A stretch of 64,000 nucleotides of DNA, taken from positions 155,019 through 219,018 of the IMG/VR virus record IMGVR_UViG_3300044701_003160; one strand, given 5' to 3'. The notes under the pieces were generated by a model that saw nothing but the letters and a program-made list of their open reading frames with translations, was not told where the DNA came from and made no database searches. The translations under genes were made by a program, and so were the position numbers. Below are positions 44,667 to 58,881 of this stretch, in pieces (position 1 is the stretch's first letter; each line of letters begins with the position of its first letter).

Positions 44667-44696
44667 ACACTACTGATGCACTTTCAGGGGCCCAAT
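44667..44696 (-). repeat. 30-bp cassette/promoter repeat, copy 1
   Basis: ATTGGGCCCCTGAAAGTGCATCAGTAGTGT (minus strand). Confidence 0.95.
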
Positions 44697-44697
44697 A

Positions 44698-44865
44698 TCA
44701 TTCAACTTCCTGCAGTCTCTCTATAAACTCATCCAGGTAATCTGTGGGATCGTGACCTAACTCTGCGATACGATTTAACTCATTTAGGACTGCGTTAAAT
44801 TGTTTCACATAAGGCACGCGAATTCTGTCTGTCTTGCCCAGAAATGTGTAGTTTTTAGGTCTCAT
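44698..44865 (-). CDS. Small protein with GKTDRIRVP motif (possible DNA binder)
   Basis: Hand-translated 55 aa MRPKNYTFLGKTDRIRVPYVKQFNAVLNELNRIAELGHDPTDYLDEFIERLQEVE. Confidence 0.6.
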   Translation of the reverse strand: MRPKNYTFLGKTDRIRVPYVKQFNAVLNELNRIAELGHDPTDYLDEFIERLQEVE

Positions 44866-44915
44866 AGTTTTGTCCCAAAATGATGCTATTATCTATAAGG
44901 TTTTGGGACAAAACT
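44866..44915. repeat. Perfect 15-bp inverted repeat abutting a start codon
   Basis: AGTTTTGTCCCAAAA (44866-44880) / TTTTGGGACAAAACT (44901-44915), 20-nt loop. Confidence 0.9.
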
Positions 44916-44927
44916 CAAAGTGCTGTT

Positions 44928-45101
44928 TTACCACCTCTCAGGGCAACTTAGGTCCTCAACGTATGCATCCACACGCTCAGCTGGTTCCAGTTGAAATAGT
45001 TTCTCCCAGTCAATCTGATGCGGGTCAAAGTCTGGAAACGCTGAGATGTCAAGAGTTACACGATACCTAACTTTCTGTGCTTGTTGAAACGCAACTGACA
45101 T
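44928..45101 (-). CDS. Hypothetical protein (57 aa)
   Basis: Hand-translated MSVAFQQAQKVRYRVTLDISAFPDFDPHQIDWEKLFQLEPAERVDAYVEDLSCPERW; AGGAG RBS and sigma70 promoter. Confidence 0.75.
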   Translation of the reverse strand: MSVAFQQAQKVRYRVTLDISAFPDFDPHQIDWEKLFQLEPAERVDAYVEDLSCPERW

Positions 45102-45129
45102 AAGTGTGCTCCTGAATGTGTATAGGAAT

Positions 45130-45158
45130 ACTATAAGTCCTCTGGGTGTTTATGTCAA
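45130..45158 (-). promoter_or_regulatory. Canonical sigma70-type early promoter
   Basis: TTGACA-N17-TATAGT on minus strand. Confidence 0.85.
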
Positions 45159-45460
45159 GAGGTTGGGAGTATTTATTCGGGGTTCTTATGTTTTTTGAGT
45201 GTCCTGTGAGGGTTTATGAACGTCCGGAGCGGGGTTATACTTGACGGAATCGCGTTTCTGTGTTAGCGTCGCCTTAGATCACAAGACCTGGCTAGATTAA
45301 AAGGACCATAAGATCGCCACCTAATTGATACGAATCCTTATCATTATCACCTTTTAATTACAATAATTATCACACACTTAAATCACACAGCTATAATTAA
45401 AAAAGGCTTTTTTATTTGTTTTAATACATTTTTAACCTTATTTACCTTTCATAAGCATAC

Positions 45461-45491
45461 AAAAAAGCAGAGGATTACCAGTCCTCTGCTT
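45461..45491 (-). terminator. Intrinsic terminator
   Basis: AAGCAGAGGA-7nt-TCCTCTGCTT followed by TTTT on minus strand. Confidence 0.85.
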
Positions 45492-45579
45492 ATACACCCA
45501 ACCACCATTTGATTGAATTATCTATACTCTACGATGTCACTTTGATTGTATAGCAGAGGCAAACATCTTCCTCTTTGTA

Positions 45580-45837
45580 TTAGATACTCACACAAGCACC
45601 TTTTCGCATTTGAGTATAACCTTTATGCCATTGAACTGCTTGCCCATTCACATGATGCAACCCATAATAATACCTTCGGACATTAGTTTCACTCAAATCA
45701 TAACACTTTGCAATTTGCTTAAATGTATGCTCTGGGAAAACTTTCTTATGTTTGTTGATAGTTTCACACCAATACTTTGCATGATCAGTGAAACGAATTG
45801 AATGAGTTGAATGTACTTGAATGTTACGCATAATCAT
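45580..45837 (-). CDS. Hypothetical protein with an HTH-like segment
   Basis: TFKQIAKCYDLSETNVRRYYYG resembles a helix-turn-helix. Confidence 0.6.
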   Translation of the reverse strand: MIMRNIQVHSTHSIRFTDHAKYWCETINKHKKVFPEHTFKQIAKCYDLSETNVRRYYYGLHHVNGQAVQWHKGYTQMRKGACVSI

Positions 45838-45977
45838 TGGATTTGAGAATTAGGAACTTCTTGAATTGTCTCTTGAATTGTGATAATTTGATTCGTTTCA
45901 GTAAGATAATCAGTTTGCATTACATTCGGACCAATGATAGATTGACCGACAATAGTTGCGACTAGGAGTTCAATCAT
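45834..45977 (-). CDS. Hypothetical protein (47 aa)
   Basis: Hand-translated MIELLVATIVGQSIIGPNVMQTDYLTE...; ATGA overlaps at both ends. Confidence 0.6.
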   Translation of the reverse strand: MIELLVATIVGQSIIGPNVMQTDYLTETNQIITIQETIQEVPNSQIQ

Positions 45978-46150
45978 TGTGCGTTTTCAGAATAAAGAAT
46001 GTCGTTCACTATTTGGCGAAACTTATCTGCATCAGTCACACATTCATGAGATAATTGTGAATCTTCGATGTCGTATTGTTTCATCTCCAGAGTGTGAATC
46101 ACGTCATTCATAATTTCAGTCAATGCGAAAAGTTTGTCTGCGTCAGTCAT
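45974..46150 (-). CDS. Hypothetical protein (58 aa)
   Basis: Hand-translated MTDADKLFALTEIMNDVIHTLEMKQYDIED...; ATGA overlap. Confidence 0.55.
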   Translation of the reverse strand: MTDADKLFALTEIMNDVIHTLEMKQYDIEDSQLSHECVTDADKFRQIVNDILYSENAQ

Positions 46151-46247
46151 TGAAAAAGTGTAAAATTAAAAGTGCAATTTGTTGGTCACTGAATACATCT
46201 AACTCATCATCAGTGAATGTACTTAACAGAGAGAAAACTTTTGTCAT
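46143..46247 (-). CDS. Hypothetical peptide (34 aa)
   Basis: Hand-translated MTKVFSLLSTFTDDELDVFSDQQIALLILHFFND; fills the gap exactly. Confidence 0.4.
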   Translation of the reverse strand: MTKVFSLLSTFTDDELDVFSDQQIALLILHFFND

Positions 46248-46253
46248 TAGGAT

Positions 46254-46565
46254 TCAGTCGAGTTTGATACCATTGTTGAAAGGAACTTCACCATTGGATG
46301 TTGATACAAACCAGTTGAAGTTCTTTTGATACACACGCTCTCCATTTCCGTGTGCAGAAAGAATAGCATTTAGACGGGATTTGGTTGTGGTTGTTTGATG
46401 TCCGCCATCGAACAATTCGAGGAAAGTATCAGCAACCATTGCAATCAGATTGTTATACAAATAAACGAAACTTACTCCTTCAATGTTAATGACTTTCGTA
46501 TTGTCGCATTTCCAATCAGTTTCCGTGAGAATAGCACGGTTCATTTGTGCTTCGATCTTACGCAT
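46254..46565 (-). CDS. Hypothetical protein, first gene after repeat copy 2
   Basis: 103-aa ORF MRKIEAQMNRAI...TTTTKSRLNAIL. Confidence 0.75.
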   Translation of the reverse strand: MRKIEAQMNRAILTETDWKCDNTKVINIEGVSFVYLYNNLIAMVADTFLELFDGGHQTTTTKSRLNAILSAHGNGERVYQKNFNWFVSTSNGEVPFNNGIKLD

Positions 46566-46586
46566 TTTAGGATTGGTTGAGTGGTG

Positions 46587-46616
46587 ATACTACTGATGCA
46601 CTTTCAGGGGCCCAGT
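46587..46616 (-). repeat. 30-bp repeat, copy 2
   Basis: ACTGGGCCCCTGAAAGTGCATCAGTAGTAT. Confidence 0.95.
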
Positions 46617-46617
46617 A

Positions 46618-46779
46618 TCAGTAACATTGCCGATCATAGATTGACTCATTCCATCCGTTACGATAGTATTCACGAGCATCATAATCTTCAGCAGTCATTA
46701 GATCATCGTGCTCACAATCTTCATAGTAAGCATCAAACTTAGAATACGATTCACCTTTGTAGAAACTGGTTGTCGTCAT
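46618..46779 (-). CDS. Acidic Tyr-rich peptide (53 aa)
   Basis: Hand-translated MTTTSFYKGESYSKFDAYYEDCEHDDLMTAEDYDAREYYRNGWNESIYDRQCY. Confidence 0.55.
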   Translation of the reverse strand: MTTTSFYKGESYSKFDAYYEDCEHDDLMTAEDYDAREYYRNGWNESIYDRQCY

Positions 46780-46937
46780 TTGTGATTCTGAAAGTTGTTT
46801 GCGTTGTTTGTTTGAACTGCATTGATTGTCTGCTTCTGAACAAACCTAACTCCGTTGTCCAAAATAGGCGCAAGACCGTTAAAGCCTACCGTTCCGACTG
46901 AAATACCAAGAACGGTTCCAAGTATAAAGGATTTCAT
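46776..46937 (-). CDS. Small membrane protein (53 aa)
   Basis: Hand-translated MKSFILGTVLGISVGTVGFNGLAPILDNGV...; GxxxG-rich hydrophobic N-terminus. Confidence 0.6.
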   Translation of the reverse strand: MKSFILGTVLGISVGTVGFNGLAPILDNGVRFVQKQTINAVQTNNANNFQNHK

Positions 46938-46940
46938 AAT

Positions 46941-47285
46941 TTAGACTCCAAGATCAACAAGTTTCAGGAAAACATTCTTTCTTGCAACTACCTTACCGTT
47001 TACAGTATAAGAGTAACGAACTCCACCCTTTACAGTCGGTGAGCAACGGCAATAGAGTTTGACCTCGTTAATCTTATCACCTTGCTGATTGTGCAAAGGA
47101 AAGTAATAAGAACACTCACCAGCAATATATGATGCTTTAGAGCGAGGATCAACAACAACGGTAGCATTCAGGCGATCAATAATACCATTGCGAGCATCAT
47201 AATTATCGCGGGCAAGTTTGGATGCAAGATTGATGCTATCTTGAATGTCGTTGATGGTCATTTGGTTGGTTTGGGTGTTGCTCAT
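46941..47285 (-). CDS. Hypothetical protein, first gene after repeat copy 3
   Basis: 114-aa ORF from the ATG inside the repeat; second in-frame ATG at codon 9. Confidence 0.7.
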   Translation of the reverse strand: MSNTQTNQMTINDIQDSINLASKLARDNYDARNGIIDRLNATVVVDPRSKASYIAGECSYYFPLHNQQGDKINEVKLYCRCSPTVKGGVRYSYTVNGKVVARKNVFLKLVDLGV

Positions 47286-47313
47286 ACTACTGATGCACTT
47301 TCAGGGGCCCAGT
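47284..47313 (-). repeat. 30-bp repeat, copy 3
   Basis: ACTGGGCCCCTGAAAGTGCATCAGTAGTAT. Confidence 0.95.
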
Positions 47314-47314
47314 A

Positions 47315-47482
47315 TCAGTCACTTACCGAAACCCAGTTGTTACCATCATACTCAACCATCTCTCCATCGACTATACAAAACTCCATCAAATAATAATCAA
47401 GACTTACACCAAGTTCATCAGCTTCAGATTTGAGTTCAGTAAATTGTTGAACGTCAAGAATAAAGAAATTAGTTTCAATCAT
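47315..47482 (-). CDS. Hypothetical protein (55 aa)
   Basis: Hand-translated MIETNFFILDVQQFTELKSEADELGVSLDYYLMEFCIVDGEMVEYDGNNWVSVSD. Confidence 0.65.
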   Translation of the reverse strand: MIETNFFILDVQQFTELKSEADELGVSLDYYLMEFCIVDGEMVEYDGNNWVSVSD

Positions 47483-47483
47483 C

Positions 47484-47645
47484 TTACCAGTTAATAAGAG
47501 TAGCTGTGTTGCCTAGTTGATTTTGTTCGTGAATGATTTCTTCTGCGTGAGCATAAGTTTTAACTGTGATGTATCGTGCTTTGCCTCTTGTTTCAGGAAA
47601 CAAATTGAGACGATCAATGATACGAACTGTATTAGAATGTTTCAT
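47484..47645 (-). CDS. Hypothetical protein (53 aa)
   Basis: Hand-translated MKHSNTVRIIDRLNLFPETRGKARYITVKTY... Confidence 0.65.
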   Translation of the reverse strand: MKHSNTVRIIDRLNLFPETRGKARYITVKTYAHAEEIIHEQNQLGNTATLINW

Positions 47646-47646
47646 T

Positions 47647-47820
47647 TCAGACAGTAGCAGGAGAGAGGGAAACTTCGACTCGTTTGAGATTCAAACCTTG
47701 CAGTTGTTCATTCACACGCTTGCAGATAGCTTCAGTTGGATTCTTGAGTTTGGACTTCTCGTACCAAATAGTACGACAACCATCATTAGTTTCAACTTGA
47801 ATACGAATAGTTTTCATCAT
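47647..47820 (-). CDS. Hypothetical protein (57 aa)
   Basis: Hand-translated MMKTIRIQVETNDGCRTIWYEKSKLKNP... Confidence 0.65.
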   Translation of the reverse strand: MMKTIRIQVETNDGCRTIWYEKSKLKNPTEAICKRVNEQLQGLNLKRVEVSLSPATV

Positions 47821-47823
47821 CAA

Positions 47824-47991
47824 TCAGATAACAGAGTAACAAGCAACAGAGGAAGGAATACCAGATAATGCTAAAGAACCGTTGCGATCATCAGCATAAT
47901 CGTAGGCATCATCTTCGCTGTAGAAAGGTCCAATGTACTCAGGAGAATCGAGTGCATTAGAATCAAATCGGACAGTGTAGGTGGTGTTCAT
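47824..47991 (-). CDS. Hypothetical protein (55 aa); its only ATG lies inside repeat copy 4
   Basis: Hand-translated MNTTYTVRFDSNALDSPEYIGPFYSEDDAYDYADDRNGSLALSGIPSSVACYSVI. Confidence 0.6.
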   Translation of the reverse strand: MNTTYTVRFDSNALDSPEYIGPFYSEDDAYDYADDRNGSLALSGIPSSVACYSVI

Positions 47992-48019
47992 ACTACTGAT
48001 GCACTTTCAGGGGCCCAGT
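47990..48019 (-). repeat. 30-bp repeat, copy 4
   Basis: ACTGGGCCCCTGAAAGTGCATCAGTAGTAT. Confidence 0.95.
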
Positions 48020-48040
48020 TGTGATTAACTTGCAGAAAAC

Positions 48041-48232
48041 TTAGAGAGTTTGAAATGCCTCTGCACGGGTGTTTTCATACTTTTTCTTGAGATACTTTTG
48101 TGTGATACTATCAATCACAGGATACCATTGTTCTTTATTGGAAAGATGACTAATACCTCGTGCATCGTTGAGAAGAAACACGATACAGTTCTCCTCATCT
48201 TGAGTGAGATTCAGTCGGTTGAGAATAGTCAT
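48041..48232 (-). CDS. Hypothetical protein
   Basis: 63-aa ORF; ATGA overlap with the upstream gene. Confidence 0.6.
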   Translation of the reverse strand: MTILNRLNLTQDEENCIVFLLNDARGISHLSNKEQWYPVIDSITQKYLKKKYENTRAEAFQTL

Positions 48233-48510
48233 ACTAGATTAAGTTCAGGAGCAGGTTCAACCTTAAAGTTACCAAATCGACCACAAGAGATAGAAACAGC
48301 ATGAGAAGGTGCGCCGAGTTCATCAACAACATCCCAGAAATCTTTGCCTTCTTCGATTACAACATAACCGAAAGTTCCAGGATTTGAGAGTTGCTTACGT
48401 CCATTCTGTTTTGCATCATTCAGGTTAAAGAATCGCTCTTTACGATTCCACCAACCTAGACGTGCTACATCTTCACTTGGACCGAAAGAGATTGTGATAA
48501 AGTCAGACAT
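48229..48510 (-). CDS. Hypothetical protein
   Basis: 93-aa ORF on the coding strand. Confidence 0.7.
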   Translation of the reverse strand: MSDFITISFGPSEDVARLGWWNRKERFFNLNDAKQNGRKQLSNPGTFGYVVIEEGKDFWDVVDELGAPSHAVSISCGRFGNFKVEPAPELNLV

Positions 48511-48517
48511 AATCAGT

Positions 48518-48697
48518 TCAGGATTTAATCAATGAAGGATAGTCTTTCATACGGAAGACTTTGTTGCGAGGGTTAATGTCAATCAATCGGTCAAGTGCAT
48601 CACCAATCGTAGAACGAACTTGCTCATCTTTCAGTGATACTTGCTCATACACTTCGTAGAGAGCAGTATAAATGTCGTCCCATTGAGTTTGAGTCAT
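48518..48697 (-). CDS. Hypothetical protein
   Basis: MTQTQWDDIYTALYEVYE...; start trimmed to the ATG at 48697. Confidence 0.65.
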   Translation of the reverse strand: MTQTQWDDIYTALYEVYEQVSLKDEQVRSTIGDALDRLIDINPRNKVFRMKDYPSLIKS

Positions 48698-48699
48698 AA

Positions 48700-48924
48700 T
48701 CAGGCAGGAAGAACACAGAAAGTTCCACACCAACCGCGAACCCATTGTAGAGTTTCATCGTAGGAAGTGCGGGGTTTGGACATTACCATCGACACATTCT
48801 TTTCAGGATTGTATGCAATAGCAACGAACTTGTCTTCTACTTGTTGAATCCACATTTGATTCACTTTACCTTCCTTCCAGTTGGTGTGATAGTGGTAGAC
48901 TTGATCCATTGTGGTTGTGCTCAT
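48700..48924 (-). CDS. Hypothetical protein, first gene after repeat copy 5
   Basis: 74-aa ORF; second in-frame ATG at 48909. Confidence 0.7.
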   Translation of the reverse strand: MSTTTMDQVYHYHTNWKEGKVNQMWIQQVEDKFVAIAYNPEKNVSMVMSKPRTSYDETLQWVRGWCGTFCVLPA

Positions 48925-48952
48925 ACTACTGATGCACTTTCAGGGGCCCAGT
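48923..48952 (-). repeat. 30-bp repeat, copy 5
   Basis: ACTGGGCCCCTGAAAGTGCATCAGTAGTAT. Confidence 0.95.
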
Positions 48953-48957
48953 TGTTA

Positions 48958-50119: not shown

Positions 50120-50120
50120 T

Positions 50121-50330: not shown

Positions 50331-50337
50331 AATCAGT

Positions 50338-50535
50338 TCAGAGATTGATCCAGAGAGCATTAGCAACTACATCAGCGGCACCTGCTACATTATCACGCAC
50401 AATCAGTCGCAGAGTTTCTGCACCTTGAGGATGTTTGTGCATTTCGCGGATGTTATCTGCGGTGCGTGGATCATTAGCAGCATCCACAATCATTTCAGCG
50501 ATTTGGTTAATCATTTGACTTTGTGTGGTTCTCAT
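50338..50535 (-). CDS. Hypothetical protein, first gene after repeat copy 6
   Basis: 65-aa ORF; second in-frame ATG at codon 8. Confidence 0.65.
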   Translation of the reverse strand: MRTTQSQMINQIAEMIVDAANDPRTADNIREMHKHPQGAETLRLIVRDNVAGAADVVANALWINL

Positions 50536-50563
50536 ACTACTGATGCACTTTAAGGGGCCCAGT
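50534..50563 (-). repeat. 30-bp repeat, copy 6
   Basis: ACTGGGCCCCTTAAAGTGCATCAGTAGTAT. Confidence 0.95.
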
Positions 50564-50592
50564 AACTATTAGGAACCTAATAAATAATGTGC

Positions 50593-50677: not shown

Positions 50678-51403
50678 ATGGTAAACCCTAACAGGTTTTA
50701 TACTTATGCTTACTTGCGTGAAGATAGGACACCTTACTATATTGGTAAAGGTAGCGGGCGGAGAGTATATACAAAAAGAAAAGATGGAGTAAATGCACCC
50801 AAAGATAAATCCAAAATAATCTTTCTTAAACAAAATCTAACTGAAGAAGAGGCATTTAGGCACGAAATCTATATGATTGCAGTGTTTGGTAGAAAGGATT
50901 TAGAAACTGGTATTCTTCACAATAAGACTAATGGTGGCGAAGGCCCAAGTGGATATAAGTTTAGTGAGGAGAGTAAAGCAAGAATGAGTGCTGCAAAGAA
51001 AGGTAAACCTACTCATAATAAAGGTAAAACTCTTTCAGACGAAACAAAAAAGAAAATTGGTATAGCAAGAAAAGGCAGAACTCACTCAGAAGAAAGTAAA
51101 AGAAAAATGAGTGAAGCAAATAAAGGTAAAACTAAATCAGAAGAACATAAAAGAAAACTAAGAGAAATAAACAAAAATAGAAAATTTATATGCAATATCA
51201 TATGGACTATTGAAAACATTCATACCGAAGAATTATTTGAAATTATCAACTTAAATGAGTGGTGTAGAAATAACAACTTAAATTCAGGAACACTCAACAG
51301 AACACAAAATCACATCAAACAATATAAAGGATACAGAATTATCTCCAAGAGTTTTGTAGAAAATTCTGACGGGAAAAGCAGGACCTATCAACCAACTTCA
51401 TAA
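50678..51403 (+). CDS. GIY-YIG (Seg-like) homing endonuclease with NUMOD3 repeats
   Basis: FYTYAYLR...[11 protein letters not shown], catalytic E (FRHEI), HNKTNGGEG, repeated [16 protein letters not shown]; the only convincing plus-strand gene. Confidence 0.9.
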
Positions 51404-52217
51404 TGATGCTATCATTTTTCAGAACAAATCCTTCACCAACAATCCTTTCACCATTAAGATAAGATTTTGGTGCATCACTGACGATCATACAATCCATCAA
51501 ATCTTCTTTGAGTTCAATCATTGTGAGATACAAATGAGCAAGATGCTTACACCCCAAAATGTTGATAAGATTAAACCAGTTGAGTTCTTCCTCAGACCTA
51601 ATGATAGCATTGATTTTAACTTTTGCCTCTGCTGCTTCTTTTACAGACAGGAATTGCACATCGCTCGTATCAATCTCTGGTAGAACTGGACGGACCATAT
51701 CTACAATCGGTTGAACAAACTTAACGCTCTCAGTATCATCAAAGAATGGTGCAGTTCCAGACACATAAGCATCCTTCAACTCACCATCAGTATTCCAAAC
51801 TGTGTGTGGAGCAATTACAATCTTTTGAGCAATTACTTCAGGAAACTGATACGAAATTGTATTTGGTTGAAAAGTATCAGTATCGCCAAAACCAATAAAG
51901 TCACCTTGAATGATACTATCGACGCGAGGAAGATAATCAAAGCAAGCGTGAAGAATGTCTGCAACCTTGCCCGAATGGTTCTTCTCAATTTCATCGTGAG
52001 AATGATTGATCTTAAGTTTAACTTTGTTGAAGACAGATTTAGTGCCTACAAAGAACTTACCAGTTGCAGGATTGGTTCCCCAAACAATAGCAGGACTACC
52101 ATCAATCTTCAGCGAAACTTCATAGTCTCCGTTGAAGAAATCAAGGACTGATAGATCACCAGTAAGGATACAATCCTCAAAGTGTTCTTGATGCTTGTTA
52201 AGTGGTTTGGTCTTCAT
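51339..52217 (-). CDS. Ligase-like nucleotidyltransferase-fold protein
   Basis: SLKIDGSP (motif I KxDG), IIQGDFI (III), GEGFVL (IV), IMKLV (V). Confidence 0.6.
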
Positions 52218-52245
52218 ACTATAGATGCACTTTGAGGGGCCCAGT
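52216..52245 (-). repeat. 30-bp repeat, copy 7
   Basis: ACTGGGCCCCTCAAAGTGCATCTATAGTAT. Confidence 0.93.
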
Positions 52246-52977: not shown

Positions 52978-52986
52978 TTACAATTT

Positions 52987-53478
52987 CTAAAAAATCAGTG
53001 ATTTGGTTGGATTGGATGGGTGATAGGTCCGTTGCAGTAGAATCGCAAGAAAATCAGGTTTTGACCCCTGATGGCCACAGGGGTCTTGGTGAGACTCACC
53101 TGCGAACGGTGCTTTCTTCCTCCAGTAACATTGGCGTTGCTGTTCTCTTCTTGCCGCCCTGTATTCTTCCTCACTATTATATTTTGATTTACCTTTATTC
53201 CAAGCAACTTGTCCTTTGTGGGATTCACTCATTTTTGCTTTAGTTTCTTCTGTTGGTATTTGAACTCCCTTTTTTCCCTTGTTCCAAGGTATATTTCCTT
53301 TGAGTGAATTGCTAATTTTTTGTTTAGTCTCCTCGCTCAAAGTTCTGTATCCAGGATAAGCACCAGCACCTGGAGGTTGGAAATACTGATATTCACCTTT
53401 TTTAGGAGGTTCCCATTCCATTTCCTTCAAAGATTCTATTATTAGTTCCCAAGTCTCGTCCATACTTGCTATCAGCAT
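52987..53478 (-). CDS. NUMOD3-repeat DNA-binding protein lacking a nuclease domain
   Basis: LSEETKQKISNSLKGNIPWNKG, TEETKAKMSESHKGQVAWNKG; ATAAATA late promoter at 53489-53495. Confidence 0.7.
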   Translation of the reverse strand: MLIASMDETWELIIESLKEMEWEPPKKGEYQYFQPPGAGAYPGYRTLSEETKQKISNSLKGNIPWNKGKKGVQIPTEETKAKMSESHKGQVAWNKGKSKYNSEEEYRAARREQQRQCYWRKKAPFAGESHQDPCGHQGSKPDFLAILLQRTYHPSNPTKSLIF

Positions 53479-53491
53479 CGTTCAATTATAT

Positions 53492-54739
53492 TTATCGACG
53501 GACAACTGACACAGCAGGTTCACCTTTGGTGAAAATCGTATCAACAACTGCCTGCACACTGCGAGCGGTAGCAATACCAACCTTAGAGTACACAGGAATA
53601 CAAACCAGACCGAACGATTTACTATACTGAGCAAGGTTGCCAGGTTCAATACGTCCATCACGCATACCTTGAGCATCATCGTGATGCAAACGGATGCAAC
53701 GGCCGATGGTCTGACTGATACCAATGAAGTCCATATTGCGAAGGAACAATACTGCTTCCAGACCGCTGACGTTGATACCTTCAGCAAGAATACTGTGATG
53801 CAGAACAACAAACTTCTTGGTGTTATCCTTGCCCCAAGCAGACAGCGTATCAAAGAATACTTCGCGGTTCACTTTCTGCCCATCAATCACAGCTCCAGTC
53901 TTGGCAGTAATGTACATCCAAGAGTAACCACGTTGCTCTAGTTCAGCACAGAAATCAGTTTCAGCAACCAAAGACACAATCTGCTTGGTTGCCTTAGCAC
54001 AGATCAGAATCTTGCCGACGCTGTTCTCATCAATCGTTTCCAGCAGATTCTCTGCATCACGGTCAAAGTTGGTCTGCTTACCAGTTACCATAGGCAGTTG
54101 CTTGACGATAACTTTAGGGGGAACAATATACCCACCTTTGACAAGTTCAGGAGCAGGAACTTTACAGATCACCTGACCATAAACTTCTGCATCATTCATT
54201 CCTGGTTTACCCATAGCAAGAGAATGTTTTGGGGTAGCAGTAAAGAAGTATGCGCGTCGTGCATTAGCAGAGAAATGCTCAGTTGCAGGGAAAAAGTGAC
54301 GCTGAACACTGTTATGTGCCTCGTCAAAGTAGATTGTGTCTACATCAATCTCAGCAACAGCAAGACGCGAAAGAGAGTGATATGTCGTTACAATCAGTTT
54401 GTGATGAGACTGATTACTCTCCACCCAACTACGAATCTCCAGAGGACGAGTAGAACTTTCCCAGTGAACTTCACCTGAATGGCAGTGGAAAACTTTGGCG
54501 TTGGTGATAAACTCCAGAAACTCACTGGATAATTGCGCTGCAAGCAAAATCCGGGGAGCAACAACAACAATCGTTTGAGGAGTTTGTGATTGCAACTGAC
54601 GCATAGCATCAACAATCATCGTAGGAGTTTTTCCTGCTCCAGTAGGCATAATCAATTGCCCACGATTGTGATTCAGCATAGCATCAAGACCACGTTCTTG
54701 ATGCGGCCGCAGTTGAAAGTTCATAAGGTTGGTTCTCAT
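53492..54739 (-). CDS. Superfamily 2 (DEAH) helicase, type III-Res/UvsW-like
   Basis: LRPHQ Q-motif, MPTGAGKT, FDEAHN, TATP, ILAEGINV, QTIGRCIR; likely start at codon 6. Confidence 0.92.
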   Translation of the reverse strand: MRTNLMNFQLRPHQERGLDAMLNHNRGQLIMPTGAGKTPTMIVDAMRQLQSQTPQTIVVVAPRILLAAQLSSEFLEFITNAKVFHCHSGEVHWESSTRPLEIRSWVESNQSHHKLIVTTYHSLSRLAVAEIDVDTIYFDEAHNSVQRHFFPATEHFSANARRAYFFTATPKHSLAMGKPGMNDAEVYGQVICKVPAPELVKGGYIVPPKVIVKQLPMVTGKQTNFDRDAENLLETIDENSVGKILICAKATKQIVSLVAETDFCAELEQRGYSWMYITAKTGAVIDGQKVNREVFFDTLSAWGKDNTKKFVVLHHSILAEGINVSGLEAVLFLRNMDFIGISQTIGRCIRLHHDDAQGMRDGRIEPGNLAQYSKSFGLVCIPVYSKVGIATARSVQAVVDTIFTKGEPAVSVVRR

Positions 54740-54767
54740 ACTATAAGTGCAATTTCAGGGGCCCAGT
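54738..54767 (-). repeat. 30-bp repeat, copy 8 (most diverged)
   Basis: ACTGGGCCCCTGAAATTGCACTTATAGTAT. Confidence 0.9.
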
Positions 54768-54768
54768 T

Positions 54769-55254: not shown

Positions 55255-55256
55255 AA

Positions 55257-55454
55257 TCAACCTCCGTAGATTTCTTCAGCAACAGGAGTATCACCGAACA
55301 TTTCATTATACAACCAATCAGCAGGTTTGTCCAGGTCACGCTCACATTCTTTCAGATAAGAAATCTCACGAGCATAGAACTCCATAGACTTCTTTGCCTT
55401 CAGATACTGATTGCGAGCATCATAAAGTGCGCGTTGGATTTCAATTCGGTCCAT
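55257..55454 (-). CDS. Hypothetical protein, first gene after repeat copy 9
   Basis: 65-aa helical ORF. Confidence 0.7.
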   Translation of the reverse strand: MDRIEIQRALYDARNQYLKAKKSMEFYAREISYLKECERDLDKPADWLYNEMFGDTPVAEEIYGG

Positions 55455-55470
55455 AATGAAGTTGGTGTCT

Positions 55471-55500
55471 ATACTACTGATGCAGTTTCAGGGGCCCAGT
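55471..55500 (-). repeat. 30-bp repeat, copy 9
   Basis: ACTGGGCCCCTGAAACTGCATCAGTAGTAT. Confidence 0.95.
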
Positions 55501-55501
55501 A

Positions 55502-56134
55502 TCAGTCTTTATCAGGTCCAGTGTACTTGTGCTTAAGTTCGCTTTCTTTCTTCTTACCTGCTGCTTTTAGCACTAAATCACGCAGTTTCTGTTTTCCTGC
55601 TCTTACAACTTTCTTCTTCTCTGCTCTCGTATATTTGCCTTTAACCATATGCTCTTCAGGTTTTCTAGAACTTGAGAATCTTTCATCACTTGCAGGTTTT
55701 GATGCTTTAGGTTTATCTGCTGCTTTCTTGGAGAGTAATTGTGTTGCTGTCTTCTCTAATTCCTTTGCCTTTGGTTTAGATGCAGCACCTCCAGATGCTT
55801 TTGCTGCTGCTCTTGCTTTTGCTGCAGCTCTGCGTTCTGCTTTTACCTTTTCTGCATAAGATTGTGCAACTTCCTTACTTCCACGCTCTTTTTCAGGTTG
55901 AGCTTGACGTTCAGCAGCAGTCTTTTGAGTTCCAATATCCTTTCTTGGTTTATAAGAACTTGGTCTAGATTCTCCACCACCTGTTCTCTTTGTTCTACGG
56001 ATTTCTGCTGGTGACTTTTTCCTTTCTTGACTAACTCTACCACCAGAACCAATAGTTCTGATTTGAGAACCCGACATCACCTCTTTGTCGTAAGTTGCCT
56101 CGCAGAGAGTCATAAATTGAGAGAACGTTTTCAT
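55502..56134 (-). CDS. Basic putative internal head protein with a capsid-targeting-like N-terminus
   Basis: MKTFSQFMTLCEA resembles the T4 IP CTS MKTYQEFIAE; K/R/A-rich; CTAAATA promoter at 56157-56163. Confidence 0.65.
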   Translation of the reverse strand: MKTFSQFMTLCEATYDKEVMSGSQIRTIGSGGRVSQERKKSPAEIRRTKRTGGGESRPSSYKPRKDIGTQKTAAERQAQPEKERGSKEVAQSYAEKVKAERRAAAKARAAAKASGGAASKPKAKELEKTATQLLSKKAADKPKASKPASDERFSSSRKPEEHMVKGKYTRAEKKKVVRAGKQKLRDLVLKAAGKKKESELKHKYTGPDKD

Positions 56135-56156
56135 CAGAAACAGAGTTGTTTCTTAT

Positions 56157-56224
56157 TATTTAGAATAATACAGGAGCGAGAGGACAAAATCAAGCAAAAG
56201 TGGCCAGTTTCTCAACTGGCCACT
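56157..56224 (-). promoter_or_regulatory. Stem-loop, sigma70-like promoter and late promoter in tandem
   Basis: AGTGGCCAGTT-N4-AACTGGCCACT (56199-56224); TTGATT-N17-TATTAT (56193-56165); CTAAATA (56163-56157). Confidence 0.75.
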
Positions 56225-56229
56225 CACAT

Positions 56230-56460
56230 TCAATCTTCTTCTTGTTCTTCCTCTACAACTTGATTTTCTAGTGCTAGTTTATCAAATGCTGCTTTACTAC
56301 CCTTAAAGACACGACCATCTTTGTAGAATCCAAGAACTCTTTCTCGTCGTGCTTCAAGTAGAATATCATATTGCTCTTGTTGTTCGCGTGAGAGTTTGAA
56401 ATCTTGTTGTCTCCACTTAAGTTGGAGTTCACGCAGATGATGCAGAATGTTAGAAGTCAT
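56230..56460 (-). CDS. Hypothetical protein
   Basis: 76-aa ORF on the coding strand. Confidence 0.7.
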   Translation of the reverse strand: MTSNILHHLRELQLKWRQQDFKLSREQQEQYDILLEARRERVLGFYKDGRVFKGSKAAFDKLALENQVVEEEQEED

Positions 56461-56469
56461 TTATAAAAA

Positions 56470-56607
56470 TCAGTAATCGTAGTTAGAGTTGAGATACTTA
56501 TCAAAAGACTTTGAGTCTTTGTCTTCATCAAAAAGACCTTCATTCATCTCTTCAACGAAATCAAATGTAGAAAACTCTTCTACAGAGAGATCATCAAAAT
56601 CGTCCAT
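56470..56607 (-). CDS. Highly acidic peptide (45 aa), first gene after repeat copy 10
   Basis: Hand-translated MDDFDDLSVEEFSTFDFVEEMNEGLFDEDKDSKSFDKYLNSNYDY. Confidence 0.65.
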   Translation of the reverse strand: MDDFDDLSVEEFSTFDFVEEMNEGLFDEDKDSKSFDKYLNSNYDY

Positions 56608-56623
56608 TTGAGTTTGAGTGCTT

Positions 56624-56653
56624 ACATTACTGATGCACTTTCAGGGGCCCACT
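56624..56653 (-). repeat. 30-bp repeat, copy 10
   Basis: AGTGGGCCCCTGAAAGTGCATCAGTAATGT. Confidence 0.93.
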
Positions 56654-56662
56654 TCATTTAAA

Positions 56663-56881
56663 TTATTCTTGAGATAGAATAATGCACTTAACTGGTTTAG
56701 GTTCTGCTGGAACAATATGAGTTCTTACTGCATTAAACACAATAAATCCGTTAGTTATAAAAATACTTAAAAACATCAAAAGACGGATAAGAGCAATCCT
56801 ATCCGCCTCTTTATTATTCTTTCCAGACTTCTCTCCAAGTGCTTTTGCTATCAATCTCCACATAGGTTTCTTATTCTTCAT
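56663..56881 (-). CDS. Small membrane protein
   Basis: WRLIAKALGEKSG...ADRIALIRLLMFLSIFITNGFIVFNAVR. Confidence 0.75.
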   Translation of the reverse strand: MKNKKPMWRLIAKALGEKSGKNNKEADRIALIRLLMFLSIFITNGFIVFNAVRTHIVPAEPKPVKCIILSQE

Positions 56882-57057
56882 TTAGTAGATGCTTTTAATA
56901 TCTCTAATTGTTTGTAGTTATTGCGGAACACTAATACCAGTGGAGAATTTCTACCTGGTGATGGTGGAAACTTCACAACAACATAAGTTTCACATACAAA
57001 ATTAATCACACCATAAGATCCTTTATAGGTGACTTCAGTACCTTCTGCAAAAATCAT
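56878..57057 (-). CDS. Hypothetical protein (59 aa)
   Basis: Hand-translated MIFAEGTEVTYKGSYGVINFVCETYVVV...; ATGA overlaps. Confidence 0.65.
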   Translation of the reverse strand: MIFAEGTEVTYKGSYGVINFVCETYVVVKFPPSPGRNSPLVLVFRNNYKQLEILKASTK

Positions 57058-57353
57058 ACGAAAAACTGATCTAGTGGTGATTGTTTAAGTTGCATTGCAG
57101 TATAATTTCGTGTGTTCTTATAGTCCACTTCTTTGCCGACTGTAGAACTATTTACGGGAGCAAAATACTTACATTTCTTAAAGTTGTAAAAACCCCAAAT
57201 GCAACGAACAGATTTGCCGTTGTTGTAATCATAAACTCTATGATCTCTCAACCAAATTGAAAATACATTGTTCTTGAACTCCTCAATTTCATATGTGTAA
57301 TTTTTAGGTGCTTTGTGAGTGAAAGAAGGAATAAGATCAATAGAGAGTTTCAT
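57054..57353 (-). CDS. Hypothetical protein
   Basis: MKLSIDLIPSFTHKAPKNY...CIWGFY...NTRNYTAMQL. Confidence 0.75.
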   Translation of the reverse strand: MKLSIDLIPSFTHKAPKNYTYEIEEFKNNVFSIWLRDHRVYDYNNGKSVRCIWGFYNFKKCKYFAPVNSSTVGKEVDYKNTRNYTAMQLKQSPLDQFFV

Positions 57354-57520
57354 CAACAATCGTAGTATTTGTCGCGTGAGAGTAGTTTAATCTGTTCTTG
57401 GAGTTTTAGAATCTCCTGCTGCTGTTCTGTAATCTTTTGTTGCAAATGACTAATGCGGTCTTGGTATTGATCTTTGAGTTCAGATAACATCGGATTGATA
57501 TGTGATACGTTTATGGTCAC
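57353..57520 (-). CDS. Coiled-coil peptide (55 aa, GTG start)
   Basis: Hand-translated (M)TINVSHINPMLSELKDQYQDRISHLQQKITEQQQEILKLQEQIKLLSRDKYYDC. Confidence 0.6.
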   Translation of the reverse strand: MTINVSHINPMLSELKDQYQDRISHLQQKITEQQQEILKLQEQIKLLSRDKYYDC

Positions 57521-57750
57521 GTTGTAAATGCCTCTACAATTCTGGATTCTTCTTCATCTGCAAGAGCAAACCTTTGTGCATTTACTACAGATTGCATAAT
57601 TGAAAGATCATACTTATCAAGGTAATTGTCTCTCCAGTTCAATAGAATGTCGTGAACCTCATTATCATCAGCACCAATAACTGCAATCAAACCAGAATAC
57701 TCTGATGCAGGAAAAGGAACCCAGAAATCAACCAAATACAGATACTTCAT
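57517..57750 (-). CDS. Hypothetical protein
   Basis: MKYLYLVDFWVPFPASEYSGL...; start trimmed to the ATG at 57750. Confidence 0.75.
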   Translation of the reverse strand: MKYLYLVDFWVPFPASEYSGLIAVIGADDNEVHDILLNWRDNYLDKYDLSIMQSVVNAQRFALADEEESRIVEAFTT

Positions 57751-57770
57751 TGTGTGTTGTAAATTACTCC

Positions 57771-57884
57771 TTAAGTGTACCACTCATCATCACCTTCGTC
57801 AATAATGTTTTTATCAGCAGCAACTATAAATGCTGTACCAAGTGCTACAAGAACTCCAAGTCCTACGCCAAGAAAAAAAGTCAT
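57771..57884 (-). CDS. Single-TM peptide (37 aa)
   Basis: Hand-translated MTFFLGVGLGVLVALGTAFIVAADKNIIDEGDDEWYT. Confidence 0.5.
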   Translation of the reverse strand: MTFFLGVGLGVLVALGTAFIVAADKNIIDEGDDEWYT

Positions 57885-58030
57885 CGCTTTACAGAAAGAT
57901 TAGTGAATTCGGAAATGAAATAGTCAACAGTAATACCCAACTTTGATGCTTGTTCTTCAAGTTCAACAACAAGGTCCTCATGTAGTTTATCTACTTGAAG
58001 ATCCTTGCGGTTCTCATCATAATCAATCAT
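57881..58030 (-). CDS. Hypothetical protein (49 aa)
   Basis: Hand-translated MIDYDENRKDLQVDKLHEDLVVELEEQASKLGITVDYFISEFTNLSVKR. Confidence 0.65.
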   Translation of the reverse strand: MIDYDENRKDLQVDKLHEDLVVELEEQASKLGITVDYFISEFTNLSVKR

Positions 58031-58194
58031 CGTGCTTGCTCCTTTTGTTGGGTGTAAACTTTATCAAACCAGCGAGTAAGAATATTATCGCAGATTTGAT
58101 ATTCTTTGCCGTTTAATGGTGCTTTGTGCATCTGCCAGTATCTGACTGCGTGAAAGATGATTTTCCTTTCCTCTTCAGTTAAATCTTGATTCAT
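58027..58194 (-). CDS. Hypothetical protein (55 aa)
   Basis: Hand-translated MNQDLTEEERKIIFHAVRYWQMHKAPLNGKEYQICDNIL... Confidence 0.65.
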   Translation of the reverse strand: MNQDLTEEERKIIFHAVRYWQMHKAPLNGKEYQICDNILTRWFDKVYTQQKEQAR

Positions 58195-58288
58195 CTTTTG
58201 GTCGTATCACCTTGAAATAGTATGTTAAGGATCCTACCACAAAGGCGATCAAAAGTAAATAAAGCGTGATTGCAATAACAGCGATCAT
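58175..58288 (-). CDS. Single-TM peptide (37 aa)
   Basis: Hand-translated MIAVIAITLYLLLIAFVVGSLTYYFKVIRPKDESRFN. Confidence 0.5.
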   Translation of the reverse strand: MIAVIAITLYLLLIAFVVGSLTYYFKVIRPKDESRFN

Positions 58289-58419
58289 TTCATTTGTTGA
58301 ATTGCCTGTTGTTTGTAGTATGCACGATAGAGAGCATCATCACGTTGAATGAGAAATGCGTTCCATCCAATAATTGCTCCAAGAGCAATGAGAGTGTATG
58401 CAATGTACTTGGGTTTCAT
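58285..58419 (-). CDS. Single-TM peptide (44 aa)
   Basis: Hand-translated MKPKYIAYTLIALGAIIGWNAFLIQRDDALYRAYYKQQAIQQMK. Confidence 0.55.
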   Translation of the reverse strand: MKPKYIAYTLIALGAIIGWNAFLIQRDDALYRAYYKQQAIQQMK

Positions 58420-58422
58420 AGA

Positions 58423-58833
58423 TCAAACAGCAAGAGCAGCAGAGGGGATTTCAACGATTTCAGGCAGTTTGTCATCTTCAAACTGGTGCATATTATAGCA
58501 CACCCATTCACCATTACGGAAGACATAGGCATACTCTTCACCATCACACAGGTATTCGGCCAGGTTAGCATCAAGGCGAGGAGGGCAGTCTTCGCCACGC
58601 TGAGAATAGTATTGAGGACCATAAACTCCCACAACACCACTTTCATCCCAACGGTCATCAGTCCAGCAGGAGGACATATCACCACCGTCAATCAGTTCCT
58701 CGGCAAGTGATTTAGCGTTGTAGTGAGTCTTCAAGATGCGACCCAACCATTCGGGTGCGCCATCCCAGTGATGATATGCAGACAGAATAGAACCATCGGA
58801 GAGTTCAAGACCAATTCGGCTTCTAGTGGCCAT
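58423..58833 (-). CDS. Conserved phage hypothetical protein, first gene after repeat copy 11
   Basis: MATRSRIG...SAYHHWDGAPEWLG...LIDGGDMS...EEYAYVF. Confidence 0.8.
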   Translation of the reverse strand: MATRSRIGLELSDGSILSAYHHWDGAPEWLGRILKTHYNAKSLAEELIDGGDMSSCWTDDRWDESGVVGVYGPQYYSQRGEDCPPRLDANLAEYLCDGEEYAYVFRNGEWVCYNMHQFEDDKLPEIVEIPSAALAV

Positions 58834-58851
58834 TTCCAAAAAGTGTTGCTT

Positions 58852-58881
58852 ACACTATAGATGCACTTTCAGGGGCCCAAA
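58852..58881 (-). repeat. 30-bp repeat, copy 11
   Basis: TTTGGGCCCCTGAAAGTGCATCTATAGTGT; supplies the TGA stop of the upstream ORF. Confidence 0.92.

What the first reader, a model, noticed from the sequence alone, without database searches (positions are those of the whole stretch)
44667..58881. Array of 11 near-identical 30-bp repeats that divides the accessory region into gene cassettes (integron-like / mobile-promoter shuffling system)
Seen: 11 same-orientation copies of ACTGGGCCCCTGAAAGTGCATCAGTAGTAT start at 44667, 46587, 47284, 47990, 48923, 50534, 52216, 54738, 55471, 56624 and 58852. Copies 2-5 are identical and TGGGCCCCT is invariant. Successive copies start 697-2522 bp apart, and each interval holds unrelated small genes. 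I saw none in the 43-kb structural block. Established: T4-type phages such as RB49-like phages carry PeSL early-promoter cassettes proposed to mediate modular shuffling. Inference: these repeats act both as promoters and as recombination handles for excision, duplication or acquisition of early host-takeover genes. Identity across the full 30 bp is higher than a promoter alone would need, which suggests gene conversion or a site-specific mechanism.
Basis: partly seen in the sequence, partly recalled or inferred. Interest (0 to 1): 0.85.

Follow-up and report, generated by a model that had tools for sequence, protein, structure and literature searches.

The report
Repeated promoter-leader module heading cyanophage gene cassettes
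Eleven copies of a 30-40 base signal, most likely a promoter plus short leader that often carries the start codon, head the small-gene units of an uncultured freshwater T4-like cyanophage, and comparison with relatives shows they are also occasional recombination points, so this is a new variant of a known phage theme and not an integron-like system.

Summary
Eleven same-orientation copies sit at the stated coordinates, none elsewhere in the window, and none are expected by chance. The quoted sequence is on the minus strand, the strand that carries the genes.

The window comes from an uncultured freshwater T4-like cyanomyovirus. Each copy fills an intergenic gap from the upstream stop codon to the next gene start. 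In 102 of 106 unique copies (window plus IMG/VR relatives) that read TAGTATG, the ATG is in frame with the downstream gene. About 12 gene families have no other start. The transcript therefore has to include that ATG.

My best reading is a clade-specific promoter plus short leader. The likely -10 box is xAAAxT, transcription probably starts near repeat position 23, and the invariant GGGCCC probably binds a factor. No transcription start was measured.

The recombination idea is partly supported:
- The closest relative has two one-gene cassettes bounded by repeat copies, with the crossover inside the repeat.
- Gene adjacency breaks about twice as often at repeat junctions as at other junctions.
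- Copies within a genome evolve in concert.
- Even so, most breakpoints lie at repeat-free gene junctions.

No recombinase gene and no hairpin site were found, so nothing supports an integron-like or site-specific mechanism. I rate it a new variant of a known kind (PeSLs, cyanophage early elements) and moderately interesting.

The parts
58852..58881 (-). Repeat copy 1, the first in the direction of transcription. It has 5 mismatches, a TAGTGT variant and no ATG inside. The downstream gene (136 aa, phrog_1987) starts at ATG 58833, repeat position 48.
56624..56653 (-). Repeat copy 2, TAATGT variant, in which ATG-TAA forms a start-stop. The downstream 45-aa gene starts at 56607 (position 46). The TAATGT variant travels with this gene family in other genomes.
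55471..55500 (-). Repeat copy 3 (1 mismatch, TAGTATA). The downstream 65-aa gene starts at 55454 (position 46).
54738..54767 (-). Repeat copy 4 (5 mismatches, gene-linked variant GAAATTGCACTTATAGTAT) upstream of the 415-aa helicase. The in-repeat ATG at 54739 is in frame. The conserved start is the ATG at 54724 (position 43).
52216..52245 (-). Repeat copy 5 (3 mismatches) upstream of the 292-aa DUF6267 gene. The in-repeat ATG at 52217 is the only available start codon.
50534..50563 (-). Repeat copy 6 (TTAAAGT variant). It follows the opposite-strand homing-endonuclease-like gene and a small hairpin. The in-repeat ATG at 50535 is in frame with the 65-aa gene.
48923..48952 (-). Repeat copy 7 (exact). 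In-repeat ATG at 48924, with a second in-frame ATG at 48909.
47990..48019 (-). Repeat copy 8 (exact). The in-repeat ATG at 47991 is the only start of a conserved 55-aa gene: three synonymous differences from L004 fall in that frame. L004 has an extra 213-nt one-gene cassette here, bounded by two repeat copies.
47284..47313 (-). Repeat copy 9 (exact). In-repeat ATG at 47285 (114-aa gene). Compared with L004, which has a 182-nt cassette between two copies, this single copy is a chimera: its 5' flank matches one L004 copy and its 3' flank the other.
46587..46616 (-). Repeat copy 10 (exact, TAGTATC). The downstream Kyano_Gp96-family gene starts at 46565 (position 51).
44667..44696 (-). Repeat copy 11 (2 mismatches, TAGTGT). 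The downstream 54-aa gene starts at 44648 (position 48).
45130..45491 (-). Context, not a repeat: an intrinsic-terminator-like hairpin (45491..45465), then a canonical TTGACA-17-TATAGT promoter (45158..45130) and an AGGAG ribosome site before the gene at 45101. This shows that a second, host-like promoter class coexists with the repeat class.

Best explanation
The repeat is a clade-specific composite expression signal that heads each transcription unit in the hyperplastic small-gene region of an uncultured freshwater T4-like cyanomyovirus. It combines a factor-dependent promoter that lacks a -35 box, a very short SD-less leader, and in about half of the copies the start codon plus two codons (M-[N/S/R/K]-T). 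The likely layout is as follows. The invariant GGGCCC(C) is a protein-binding box. xAAAxT (repeat positions 11-16) is the -10 element. Transcription starts near position 23, giving a leader of about 5 nt to the in-repeat ATG or 20-27 nt to a downstream ATG. Because 30-40 bp identical copies lie 0.2-2.5 kb apart in one orientation, the phage's homologous recombination sometimes crosses over within them. That deletes, inserts or swaps promoter-plus-gene units and homogenises the copies within a genome. What is shown: position, orientation, invariance, the frame relation to start codons, repeat-bounded indels and concerted evolution. What is inferred: promoter activity, which hexamer serves as the -10 box, the transcription start, the binding factor and the expression timing.
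For: Anatomy:
- All 11 copies, and 289 copies in 54 related IMG/VR loci, point the same way as the genes. They fill the gap between an upstream stop codon and a gene start.
- GGGCCC, AAA and TG are 100% conserved in 207 unique copies.

The in-repeat ATG is translated:
- 102 of 106 unique copies with ATG at positions 28-30 are in frame with an ORF of at least 35 codons.
- None of those 102 has an out-of-frame ATG before position 60.
- Thirty copies, from about 12 gene families, have no other start.
- Copies without this ATG start in all three frames.

Support for xAAAxT as the -10 box:
- A copy elsewhere in the same 219-kb contig (L030) and its orthologue (L031) add TTGACA or TTGACT exactly 17 nt upstream of TAAAGT.
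- Both carry a 5' hairpin that begins at repeat position 23-25, with two compensatory pairs between the two phages.

Support for a promoter over a pure RNA element:
- One copy restarts minus-strand expression directly after an opposite-strand gene and a hairpin.

Phage-specific signal:
- No multi-copy or cyanobacterial hit in 596 Gb of prokaryote genomes.
- No near-identical copy in GenBank phage isolates.

Positional equivalence:
- In Syn9, Bellamy, S-T4 and S-SKS1 the orthologous helicase and neighbouring small-gene units are headed by repeated intergenic elements.

Recombination:
- L004 has 213-nt and 182-nt one-ORF cassettes bounded by repeat copies. The window's single copy at 47284 is a chimera of the two flanking copies.
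- Adjacency is kept at 51% of repeat junctions and 69% of other junctions, an odds ratio of 2.1. Twelve of 1000 label permutations reached that difference.
- Within-genome copies are closer than orthologous copies in 51 of 63 diverged genome pairs, and genomes carry their own sequence 'flavours'.
Against: - No transcription start was measured. The only RNA libraries available hold assembled contigs of relatives, and those contigs break at the repeat.
- Ordinary copies have no -35 box at 16-18 nt from either candidate hexamer.
- GAAAGT is a weak -10 box because it has G at -12.
- TAGTAT (positions 24-29) shows the classic T-A-x-x-x-T conservation. By analogy with the TATAAT-like boxes of isolate cyanophages, it could be the real -10 box.
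- Most synteny breaks are at repeat-free junctions.
- A unit that carries its own promoter will look 'flanked by promoters' however it arrived.
- Genome pairs in the statistics are not phylogenetically independent.
- Concerted evolution could instead reflect co-adaptation to a lineage-specific binding factor.
Confidence: 0.58

Rival explanations
1. It is an ordinary -10-only promoter class. TAGTAT (positions 24-29) is the -10 box, transcription starts about 7 nt downstream (positions 34-37), and GGGCCCC sits at about -30 as an activator box, like a MotA box. In this reading the in-repeat ATG matters only on read-through transcripts from upstream units.
For: T24, A25, T27 and T29 are 96-100% conserved, the TAnnnT pattern. 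Isolate cyanomyoviruses place a TATAAT-like box at the equivalent place, after a GC-rich element. No terminators separate the units, so read-through is plausible.
Against: About 12 gene families would lose their only start codon from the transcript made at their own promoter. The 96% in-frame rule and the lack of out-of-frame ATGs show that positions 28-60 are read by ribosomes. In L030 and L031 the TAATGT hexamer lies inside a conserved 5' hairpin, downstream of a perfect TTGACA-N17-TAAAGT promoter. Leaders would be only 6-13 nt and lack an SD sequence.
Confidence: 0.2
2. It is not a promoter but an RNA-level signal on long polycistronic early transcripts: a processing site and/or SD-independent translation-initiation platform, used wherever neighbouring genes are not translationally coupled.
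For: The repeat is contiguous with the start codon and partly coding. There is no SD and no -35 box. It occurs at the gene junctions that have a gap, whereas repeat-free junctions mostly overlap stop and start.
Against: No RNA structure: z-scores run from -1.4 to +1.8. The invariant GGGCCC palindrome and the A/T-specific hexamers look like DNA signals. The L030/L031 copy has a canonical -35 box at the correct spacing. The copy at 50534 follows an opposite-strand gene, where a new transcript is needed.
Confidence: 0.12
3. It is a site-specific recombination site of an integron-like or cassette-capture system, or the target of the neighbouring homing endonucleases.
For: There are many co-oriented identical sites with variable gene content between them. 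GGGCCC is a palindrome. Two NUMOD3 homing-endonuclease-like genes lie in the array.
Against: No integrase or recombinase was found among the 20 largest ORFs of the region. There are no inverted-repeat or hairpin arms. The crossover position inside the repeat is not fixed to one point, and most indels lack the site. The tight frame coupling to start codons is unexplained by a recombination site.
Confidence: 0.04

Closest known systems
PeSLs (promoter-early stem-loops) of RB49/phi1, T4/PST and KVP40/nt-1 (Arbiol et al. 2010, PMC2839356; Comeau et al. 2014, PMC4122927)
   Same: Both are repeated intergenic elements, concentrated in a hyperplastic region of a T4-type genome. They span from the upstream stop codon to the downstream start and sit in front of small ORFs of unknown function. 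Both are associated with indels and replacements between close relatives. [quoted passage not shown]
   Different: This repeat has no sigma-70 consensus -35 box, no stem-loop (GGGCCCC has no loop) and no SD. The start codon and two codons are often part of the repeat. Mini-circles were not tested. Enrichment at breakpoints is only about two-fold.
Early-gene regulatory element of marine T4-like cyanophages (Doron et al. 2016, ISME J). The paper was not retrievable here, so its claim of a novel early element with host-like promoters for middle genes is recalled from the abstract.
   Same: It occupies the same genomic place. In Syn9 the small-gene cluster and the orthologous helicase (44% identity) are headed by a repeated long element of about 75 nt. 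Canonical sigma-70 promoters coexist as a second class, as they do in the window.
   Different: The Syn9, Bellamy, S-T4 and S-SKS1 elements have an upstream GTGnCAC box, a GC-rich hairpin, a TATAAT-like box and an SD-bearing leader. The window's element has none of these, and sequence similarity is marginal. Homology is undecided.
Integron attC / cassette arrays
   Same: Both are arrays of co-oriented repeats that separate variable small genes.
   Different: There is no integrase, no imperfect inverted repeats that fold as a single strand, and each cassette carries its own expression signal.
Intergenic repeats that carry promoters in other viruses, for example halovirus HF2 class I/II repeats (PMC8707807, abstract seen), and the promoter-plus-gene 'morons' of lambdoid phages (the latter from general knowledge)
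   Same: Short repeats of about 30-60 bp in intergenic positions act as promoters for successive gene units. Promoter-plus-ORF is the unit of gain and loss.
   Different: The host domain and transcription machinery differ. Here the repeat extends into the coding sequence.

Membership tests
PeSL (promoter-early stem-loop) | Sigma-70 consensus promoter (-35 and -10 boxes, 17-nt spacer, AT-rich upstream region) | tested here: not met
   The consensus scan does not call the repeats. At 17-nt spacing only 1% of 207 copies have at least 4 of 6 matches to TTGACA. Only the L030/L031 copy has a -35 box.
PeSL (promoter-early stem-loop) | Stable stem-loop (terminator/attenuator) within the element | tested here: not met
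   Five copies were folded with flanks. Z-scores ran from -1.4 to +1.8 and no shared hairpin appeared. Isolate cyanophage elements do fold.
PeSL (promoter-early stem-loop) | Intergenic, concentrated in a hyperplastic region, upstream of small ORFs or ORFans | tested here: met
   All 11 copies lie at 44.6-58.9 kb, each between a stop codon and a start. None is in the 43-kb structural block.
PeSL (promoter-early stem-loop) | Indels and replacements between close relatives bounded by the element | tested here: met
   Two cassettes in L004 are bounded by copies, and the window's copy at 47284 is a chimera. The odds ratio for broken adjacency is 2.1. Many indels have no repeat.
PeSL (promoter-early stem-loop) | Mini-circles formed by exchange between neighbouring elements | not testable with these tools
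   Only assembled contigs were available. The repeat-adjacent 'joints' had 27-39 nt on the short side and are ambiguous.
Integron | Tyrosine-recombinase integrase next to the array | tested here: not met
   Pfam and PHROG scans of the 20 largest ORFs at 41-64 kb found none.
Integron | attC sites: imperfect inverted repeats that fold as a single strand | tested here: not met
   No structure beyond shuffled controls.
Cyanomyovirus early-gene regulatory element (Syn9 type) | Heads the small-gene units next to the structural module, including the helicase | tested here: met
   The window's helicase matches Syn9 gp75, and both are preceded by the respective repeat.
Cyanomyovirus early-gene regulatory element (Syn9 type) | Shared sequence architecture (GTGnCAC box, GC hairpin, TATAAT-like box, SD leader) | tested here: not met
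   There is no conserved upstream box (information under 0.15 bit at -45 to -10), no hairpin and no SD. Compare.
Cyanomyovirus early-gene regulatory element (Syn9 type) | Drives early transcription (mapped start sites, early timing) | not testable with these tools
   No culture and no raw RNA reads for this clade.

The most novel reading that the evidence does not exclude
The repeat is a portable 'expression adaptor': a factor-dependent promoter without a -35 box, a leader of about 5 nt, and ATG plus two codons. Crossovers inside it plug incoming ORFs in frame into the phage's early programme. The GGGCCC palindrome would be read by a clade-specific protein that co-evolves with the repeat. The -10-like TAGTAT just after the start site could act as a sigma-dependent pause site, as at lambda PR'. 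This would be a cassette-capture system that works by homologous recombination and needs no recombinase.
Probability: 0.25. Interest if true: 0.7.

Novelty: new variant of a known kind. Interest (0 to 1): 0.45.

Why it matters
T4-like cyanophages are major agents of mortality in picocyanobacteria, and their hyperplastic small-gene regions are where host-specific functions come and go. This element gives a sequence handle for finding those units in uncultured freshwater phages: 289 copies in 54 metagenomic loci. It points to a transcription signal that does not look like a host sigma-70 promoter. It also provides a natural data set for asking how far repeated promoters drive gene shuffling. Here they contribute measurably (two exact events, a two-fold enrichment, concerted evolution) but do not dominate. 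The start codon embedded in the repeat is unusual and can be tested directly.

Tried and rejected
- RNA evidence. No RNA run holds this phage. Laying three metatranscriptome runs and one DNA run gave only contigs of relatives, which end or switch at the repeat. No start site could be read, and the repeat-adjacent joints were too short-sided to trust.
- The Doron et al. 2016 paper could not be retrieved by PMC id or DOI. Text searches for the motif and for cyanophage early promoters found nothing specific.
- Hairpin or attC idea: rejected by folding.
- ACTG...CAGT pairing inside the repeat: the variable positions do not covary (inspection).
- Sigma-54-like GG/GC spacing: off by one, and from general knowledge cyanobacteria lack sigma-54.
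- T4 late promoter TATAAATA: only 4 of 8 positions match.
- A leaderless transcript starting at the A of the in-repeat ATG: no TAnnnT box lies 6-7 nt upstream.
- Host regulon idea: the genome scan gave only single chance hits and none in cyanobacteria.
- The 'TGA' signal just upstream of the repeat is the stop codon of the preceding gene in two preferred registers, not a -35 box.
- Rfam and tRNA scans of the region were empty.
- Predecessor diversity per gene family barely differed between repeat-led and other genes (0.51 against 0.46). This tempers the cassette idea.

Full report
**1. Observation**

The 30-mer occurs nine times with up to 3 mismatches, and its core TGGGCCCCT occurs 11 times. 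All copies are at the coordinates given and all are on the minus strand. Shuffled sequence gave 0 and 0.05 matches. A weight-matrix scan of both strands of the whole window finds these 11 and nothing else. Four copies are identical. The spacing range of 697-2522 bp is correct.

All but one of the called genes between 42 and 64 kb are also on the minus strand. The repeats are therefore co-directional with them. Each repeat fills a short intergenic gap, running from a few bases after the upstream stop codon to the next start codon. Conservation continues past the 30-mer into ...TAGTAT(G)AGCACCAAC.

**2. What the window is**

The first 42 kb encode T4-type head, tail, baseplate and fibre proteins. 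They are about 77% identical at the DNA level to marine Synechococcus and Prochlorococcus myoviruses such as Bellamy and P-TIM68. The repeat region itself has almost no DNA match among 50,697 GenBank phage records.

Runs that hold the sequence are mostly from freshwater metagenomes. IMG/VR has a 219-kb contig with identical spacing of the repeats, which is probably the source genome. The window is therefore part of an uncultured freshwater T4-like cyanomyovirus.

The repeat array lies in the small-gene hyperplastic region that abuts the baseplate and fibre genes. This is syntenic with the 43-54 kb small-gene region of Syn9, including the helicase.

Genes in the array:
- a 415-aa helicase;
- a DUF6267 protein;
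- a Kyano_Gp96-family protein;
- two NUMOD3 homing-endonuclease-like genes, one of them on the opposite strand;
- many ORFs of unknown function.

A ferredoxin gene lies just outside the array, at 60.6-60.9 kb. No recombinase was found among the 20 largest ORFs.

**3. The element in relatives**

An exact-pattern scan of IMG/VR found the core in 54 loci. Allowing up to 7 mismatches to the 30-mer gives 289 copies, and every one shares the orientation of its neighbours.

In 207 unique copies GGGCCC, AAA (positions 12-14) and TG (16-17) never vary. T24, A25, T27 and T29 are 96-100% conserved. Nothing upstream of position -9 is conserved. The 'TGA' signal just upstream is the preceding gene's stop codon in two preferred registers, not a -35 box.

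The motif is absent from GenBank isolates at BLAST sensitivity. In 596 Gb of prokaryote genomes it occurs only as scattered single hits, none in cyanobacteria. The one exception is a 2.5-kb contig with four copies that looks like a mis-binned phage fragment. It is a phage-specific signal and not a borrowed host site.

**4. How it most likely works**

Two hexamers inside the repeat could be -10 boxes: xAAAxT at positions 11-16 and TAGTAT at 24-29. Internal evidence decides between them better than resemblance does.

- *The in-repeat ATG is read by ribosomes.* Of 106 unique copies that read TAGTATG, 102 have that ATG in frame with an ORF of at least 35 codons. None of those 102 has an out-of-frame ATG before position 60. 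In 30 copies, spread over about 12 gene families, it is the only possible start. Examples are the DUF6267 gene at 52217 and the conserved 55-aa gene at 47991, whose differences from L004 are synonymous in that frame. Copies without this ATG start in all three frames. The messenger must therefore include position 28, which rules out TAGTAT as the -10 box of that messenger.
- *One copy carries a full promoter.* The one copy of the source contig that lies outside the array (L030) and its orthologue in another phage (L031) carry TTGACA or TTGACT exactly 17 nt upstream of TAAAGT. They also carry a strong hairpin that begins at repeat position 23-25 (in L030 -25.5 kcal/mol, z = -6.6), with two compensatory pairs between the two phages. 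That is what a 5'-terminal stabilising hairpin would look like on a transcript starting near position 23.
- *Ordinary copies lack a -35 box* at 16-18 nt from either hexamer. The repeat has no RNA structure and no Shine-Dalgarno sequence.

I therefore read the element as a promoter without a -35 box, probably factor-dependent through the invariant GGGCCC(C). Its -10 box would be xAAAxT and its start near position 23, followed by a 5-nt leader to the in-repeat ATG or a 20-27-nt leader to a downstream ATG. A canonical TTGACA-17-TATAGT promoter with an AGGAG ribosome site, preceded by a terminator, sits at 45491-45130. The phage thus has a second, host-like promoter class as well. None of this was measured. 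The RNA libraries available hold only contigs of relatives, and those contigs break at the repeat.

**5. Recombination handles?**

*Clean events.* The closest relative, L004 (85-97% identical), differs from the window by about ten indels or replacements in 8 kb. Two of them are clean. L004 has a 213-nt and a 182-nt unit, each consisting of a repeat plus one tiny ORF, and each sits between two repeat copies. The window has a single copy at each place. The alignments overlap over the repeat. The window's copy at 47284 has the 5' flank of one L004 copy and the 3' side of the other, so the crossover lay inside the repeat. Three more events have one edge at a repeat. Four single-gene indels have no repeat at either edge.

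*Breakpoint statistics.* Across all loci, 21-33% of homology-block ends fall within about 25 nt of a repeat. About 24% of gene junctions carry a repeat, so gene-level tests are the fairer measure:
- Adjacency of two genes that are both present in another locus is kept at 57% of repeat junctions and 73% of other junctions.
- In a set of 34 loci with reduced redundancy the figures are 51% and 69%, an odds ratio of 2.1. Twelve of 1000 within-locus label permutations reached that difference.
- Predecessor diversity per gene family hardly differs between repeat-led and other genes, 0.51 against 0.46.

*Concerted evolution.* Copies within a locus differ less (3.2 of 30 positions) than orthologous copies in different loci (3.7) or unrelated copies (4.7). 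In 51 of 63 diverged genome pairs the within-genome paralogues are closer than the orthologues. Whole genomes carry their own variant:
- L018 has GGGCCCTT in 11 of 12 copies.
- L025 has CCTTAGT(A/G)T in 6 of 7.
- L002 and L009 have GCGTCTATAGTAT in many.

Some variants also travel with their gene, for example the helicase copy and the TAATGT copy.

*Reading.* The repeats are real but minor recombination substrates. The region is plastic at single-gene resolution with or without them. Homogenisation may reflect gene conversion, promoter swapping, or co-adaptation to a binding factor. Genome pairs are not phylogenetically independent, so the statistics give effect sizes, not exact probabilities.

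**6. Comparison with known systems**

*PeSLs.* PeSLs of RB49/phi1 and other T4-type phages are defined by a sigma-70 consensus promoter plus a stem-loop. They sit in hyperplastic regions, run from stop codon to SD and start codon, and mediate shuffling and mini-circles. The window's element shares the location, the span and the association with indels. It fails both defining sequence features. It works like a PeSL in part but is not one.

*Isolate cyanomyoviruses.* I found repeated elements in the same genomic position in Syn9, Bellamy, S-T4 and S-SKS1. They consist of a GTGnCAC box, a GC-rich hairpin, a TATAAT-like box and an SD-bearing leader. These probably correspond to the 'novel regulatory element' for early genes that I recall from the abstract of Doron et al. 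2016, a paper I could not retrieve. The window's element occupies the orthologous position before the helicase but lacks the box, the hairpin and the SD. GGGCCCC may be a loop-less remnant of the hairpin, though that is speculation.

*Integrons.* Integron membership fails on every defining feature.

**7. Verdict**

The feature is genuine and highly non-random. It is best explained as a clade-specific promoter-leader-start module that also serves as an occasional crossover point. It is a new variant of a known kind.

Three points would interest a specialist:
- the start codon embedded in a repeat that is invariant across a whole uncultured clade;
- the unexplained invariant GGGCCC;
- the clear concerted evolution.

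The integron-like framing should be dropped.

Noticed in passing
window 50678-51403 (+) and 52987-53478 (-): Two NUMOD3 homing-endonuclease-like genes. The 241-aa one is the only sizeable gene on the opposite strand in this region. Its DNA matches relatives in inverted orientation and at different places (minus-strand HSPs in L008, L054, L006, L023, L034, L038, L009 and L031), as expected of a mobile endonuclease gene. It may contribute to the mosaicism independently of the repeats.
   Followed up: partly
L030:1395-1500 (-), same 219-kb contig but outside the window; orthologue L031:9640-9740 (+): The only repeat copy with a canonical -35 box (TTGACA-N17-TAAAGT). It is followed by a strong 5' hairpin (-25.5 kcal/mol, z = -6.6) with two compensatory pairs between the two phages, upstream of a gene whose product has a ParB-like 'DGRTRIRAA' stretch (by eye). 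There is no Rfam match.
   Followed up: partly
window 45102-45579 (-): A stretch of about 480 nt without ORFs. It holds a 10-bp-stem terminator with a T-run (45491..45465), an AT-rich tract and a near-consensus TTGACA-17-TATAGT promoter with an AGGAG site (45158..45130). This is a host-like promoter class distinct from the repeat. It may also hide a small RNA, although Rfam found nothing.
   Followed up: partly
window 16000-42000: The block that encodes the giant ORFs (4069 aa at 26774-38983 and 2625 aa at 17314-25191; fibre-like by position) has 28-33% GC. The flanking head, tail and small-gene regions have 35-43%. The compositional step at about 42 kb is sharp.
   Followed up: no
window 60614-60904 (-): A 96-aa 2Fe-2S ferredoxin (Fer2, 1e-24; phrog_844), a typical cyanophage auxiliary metabolic gene. 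It lies just upstream of the repeat array, in a stretch of small genes that has no repeat copies.
   Followed up: no
L105 (CAYVBV010000194.1, 2.5 kb, binned as Polynucleobacter): This contig carries four copies of the repeat core within 2.5 kb. It is almost certainly a fragment of a phage of this clade mis-binned into a bacterial MAG.
   Followed up: no
repeat positions 26-31 in 19 unique copies (e.g. window 56624 copy): When the hexamer reads TAATGT, the ATG is always followed at once by TAA or TGA, a start-stop mini-ORF. This follows from the motif's T29-R30-A31 constraint. It may or may not be functional.
   Followed up: partly
window 47646-48019 in RNA-library runs X25/X26: Freshwater metatranscriptome libraries contain contigs of relatives that cover several of the small genes. 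One contig's similarity to the window stops exactly at the upstream edge of the repeat (48019) and continues into unrelated sequence. DNA carry-over in these libraries cannot be excluded.
   Followed up: partly
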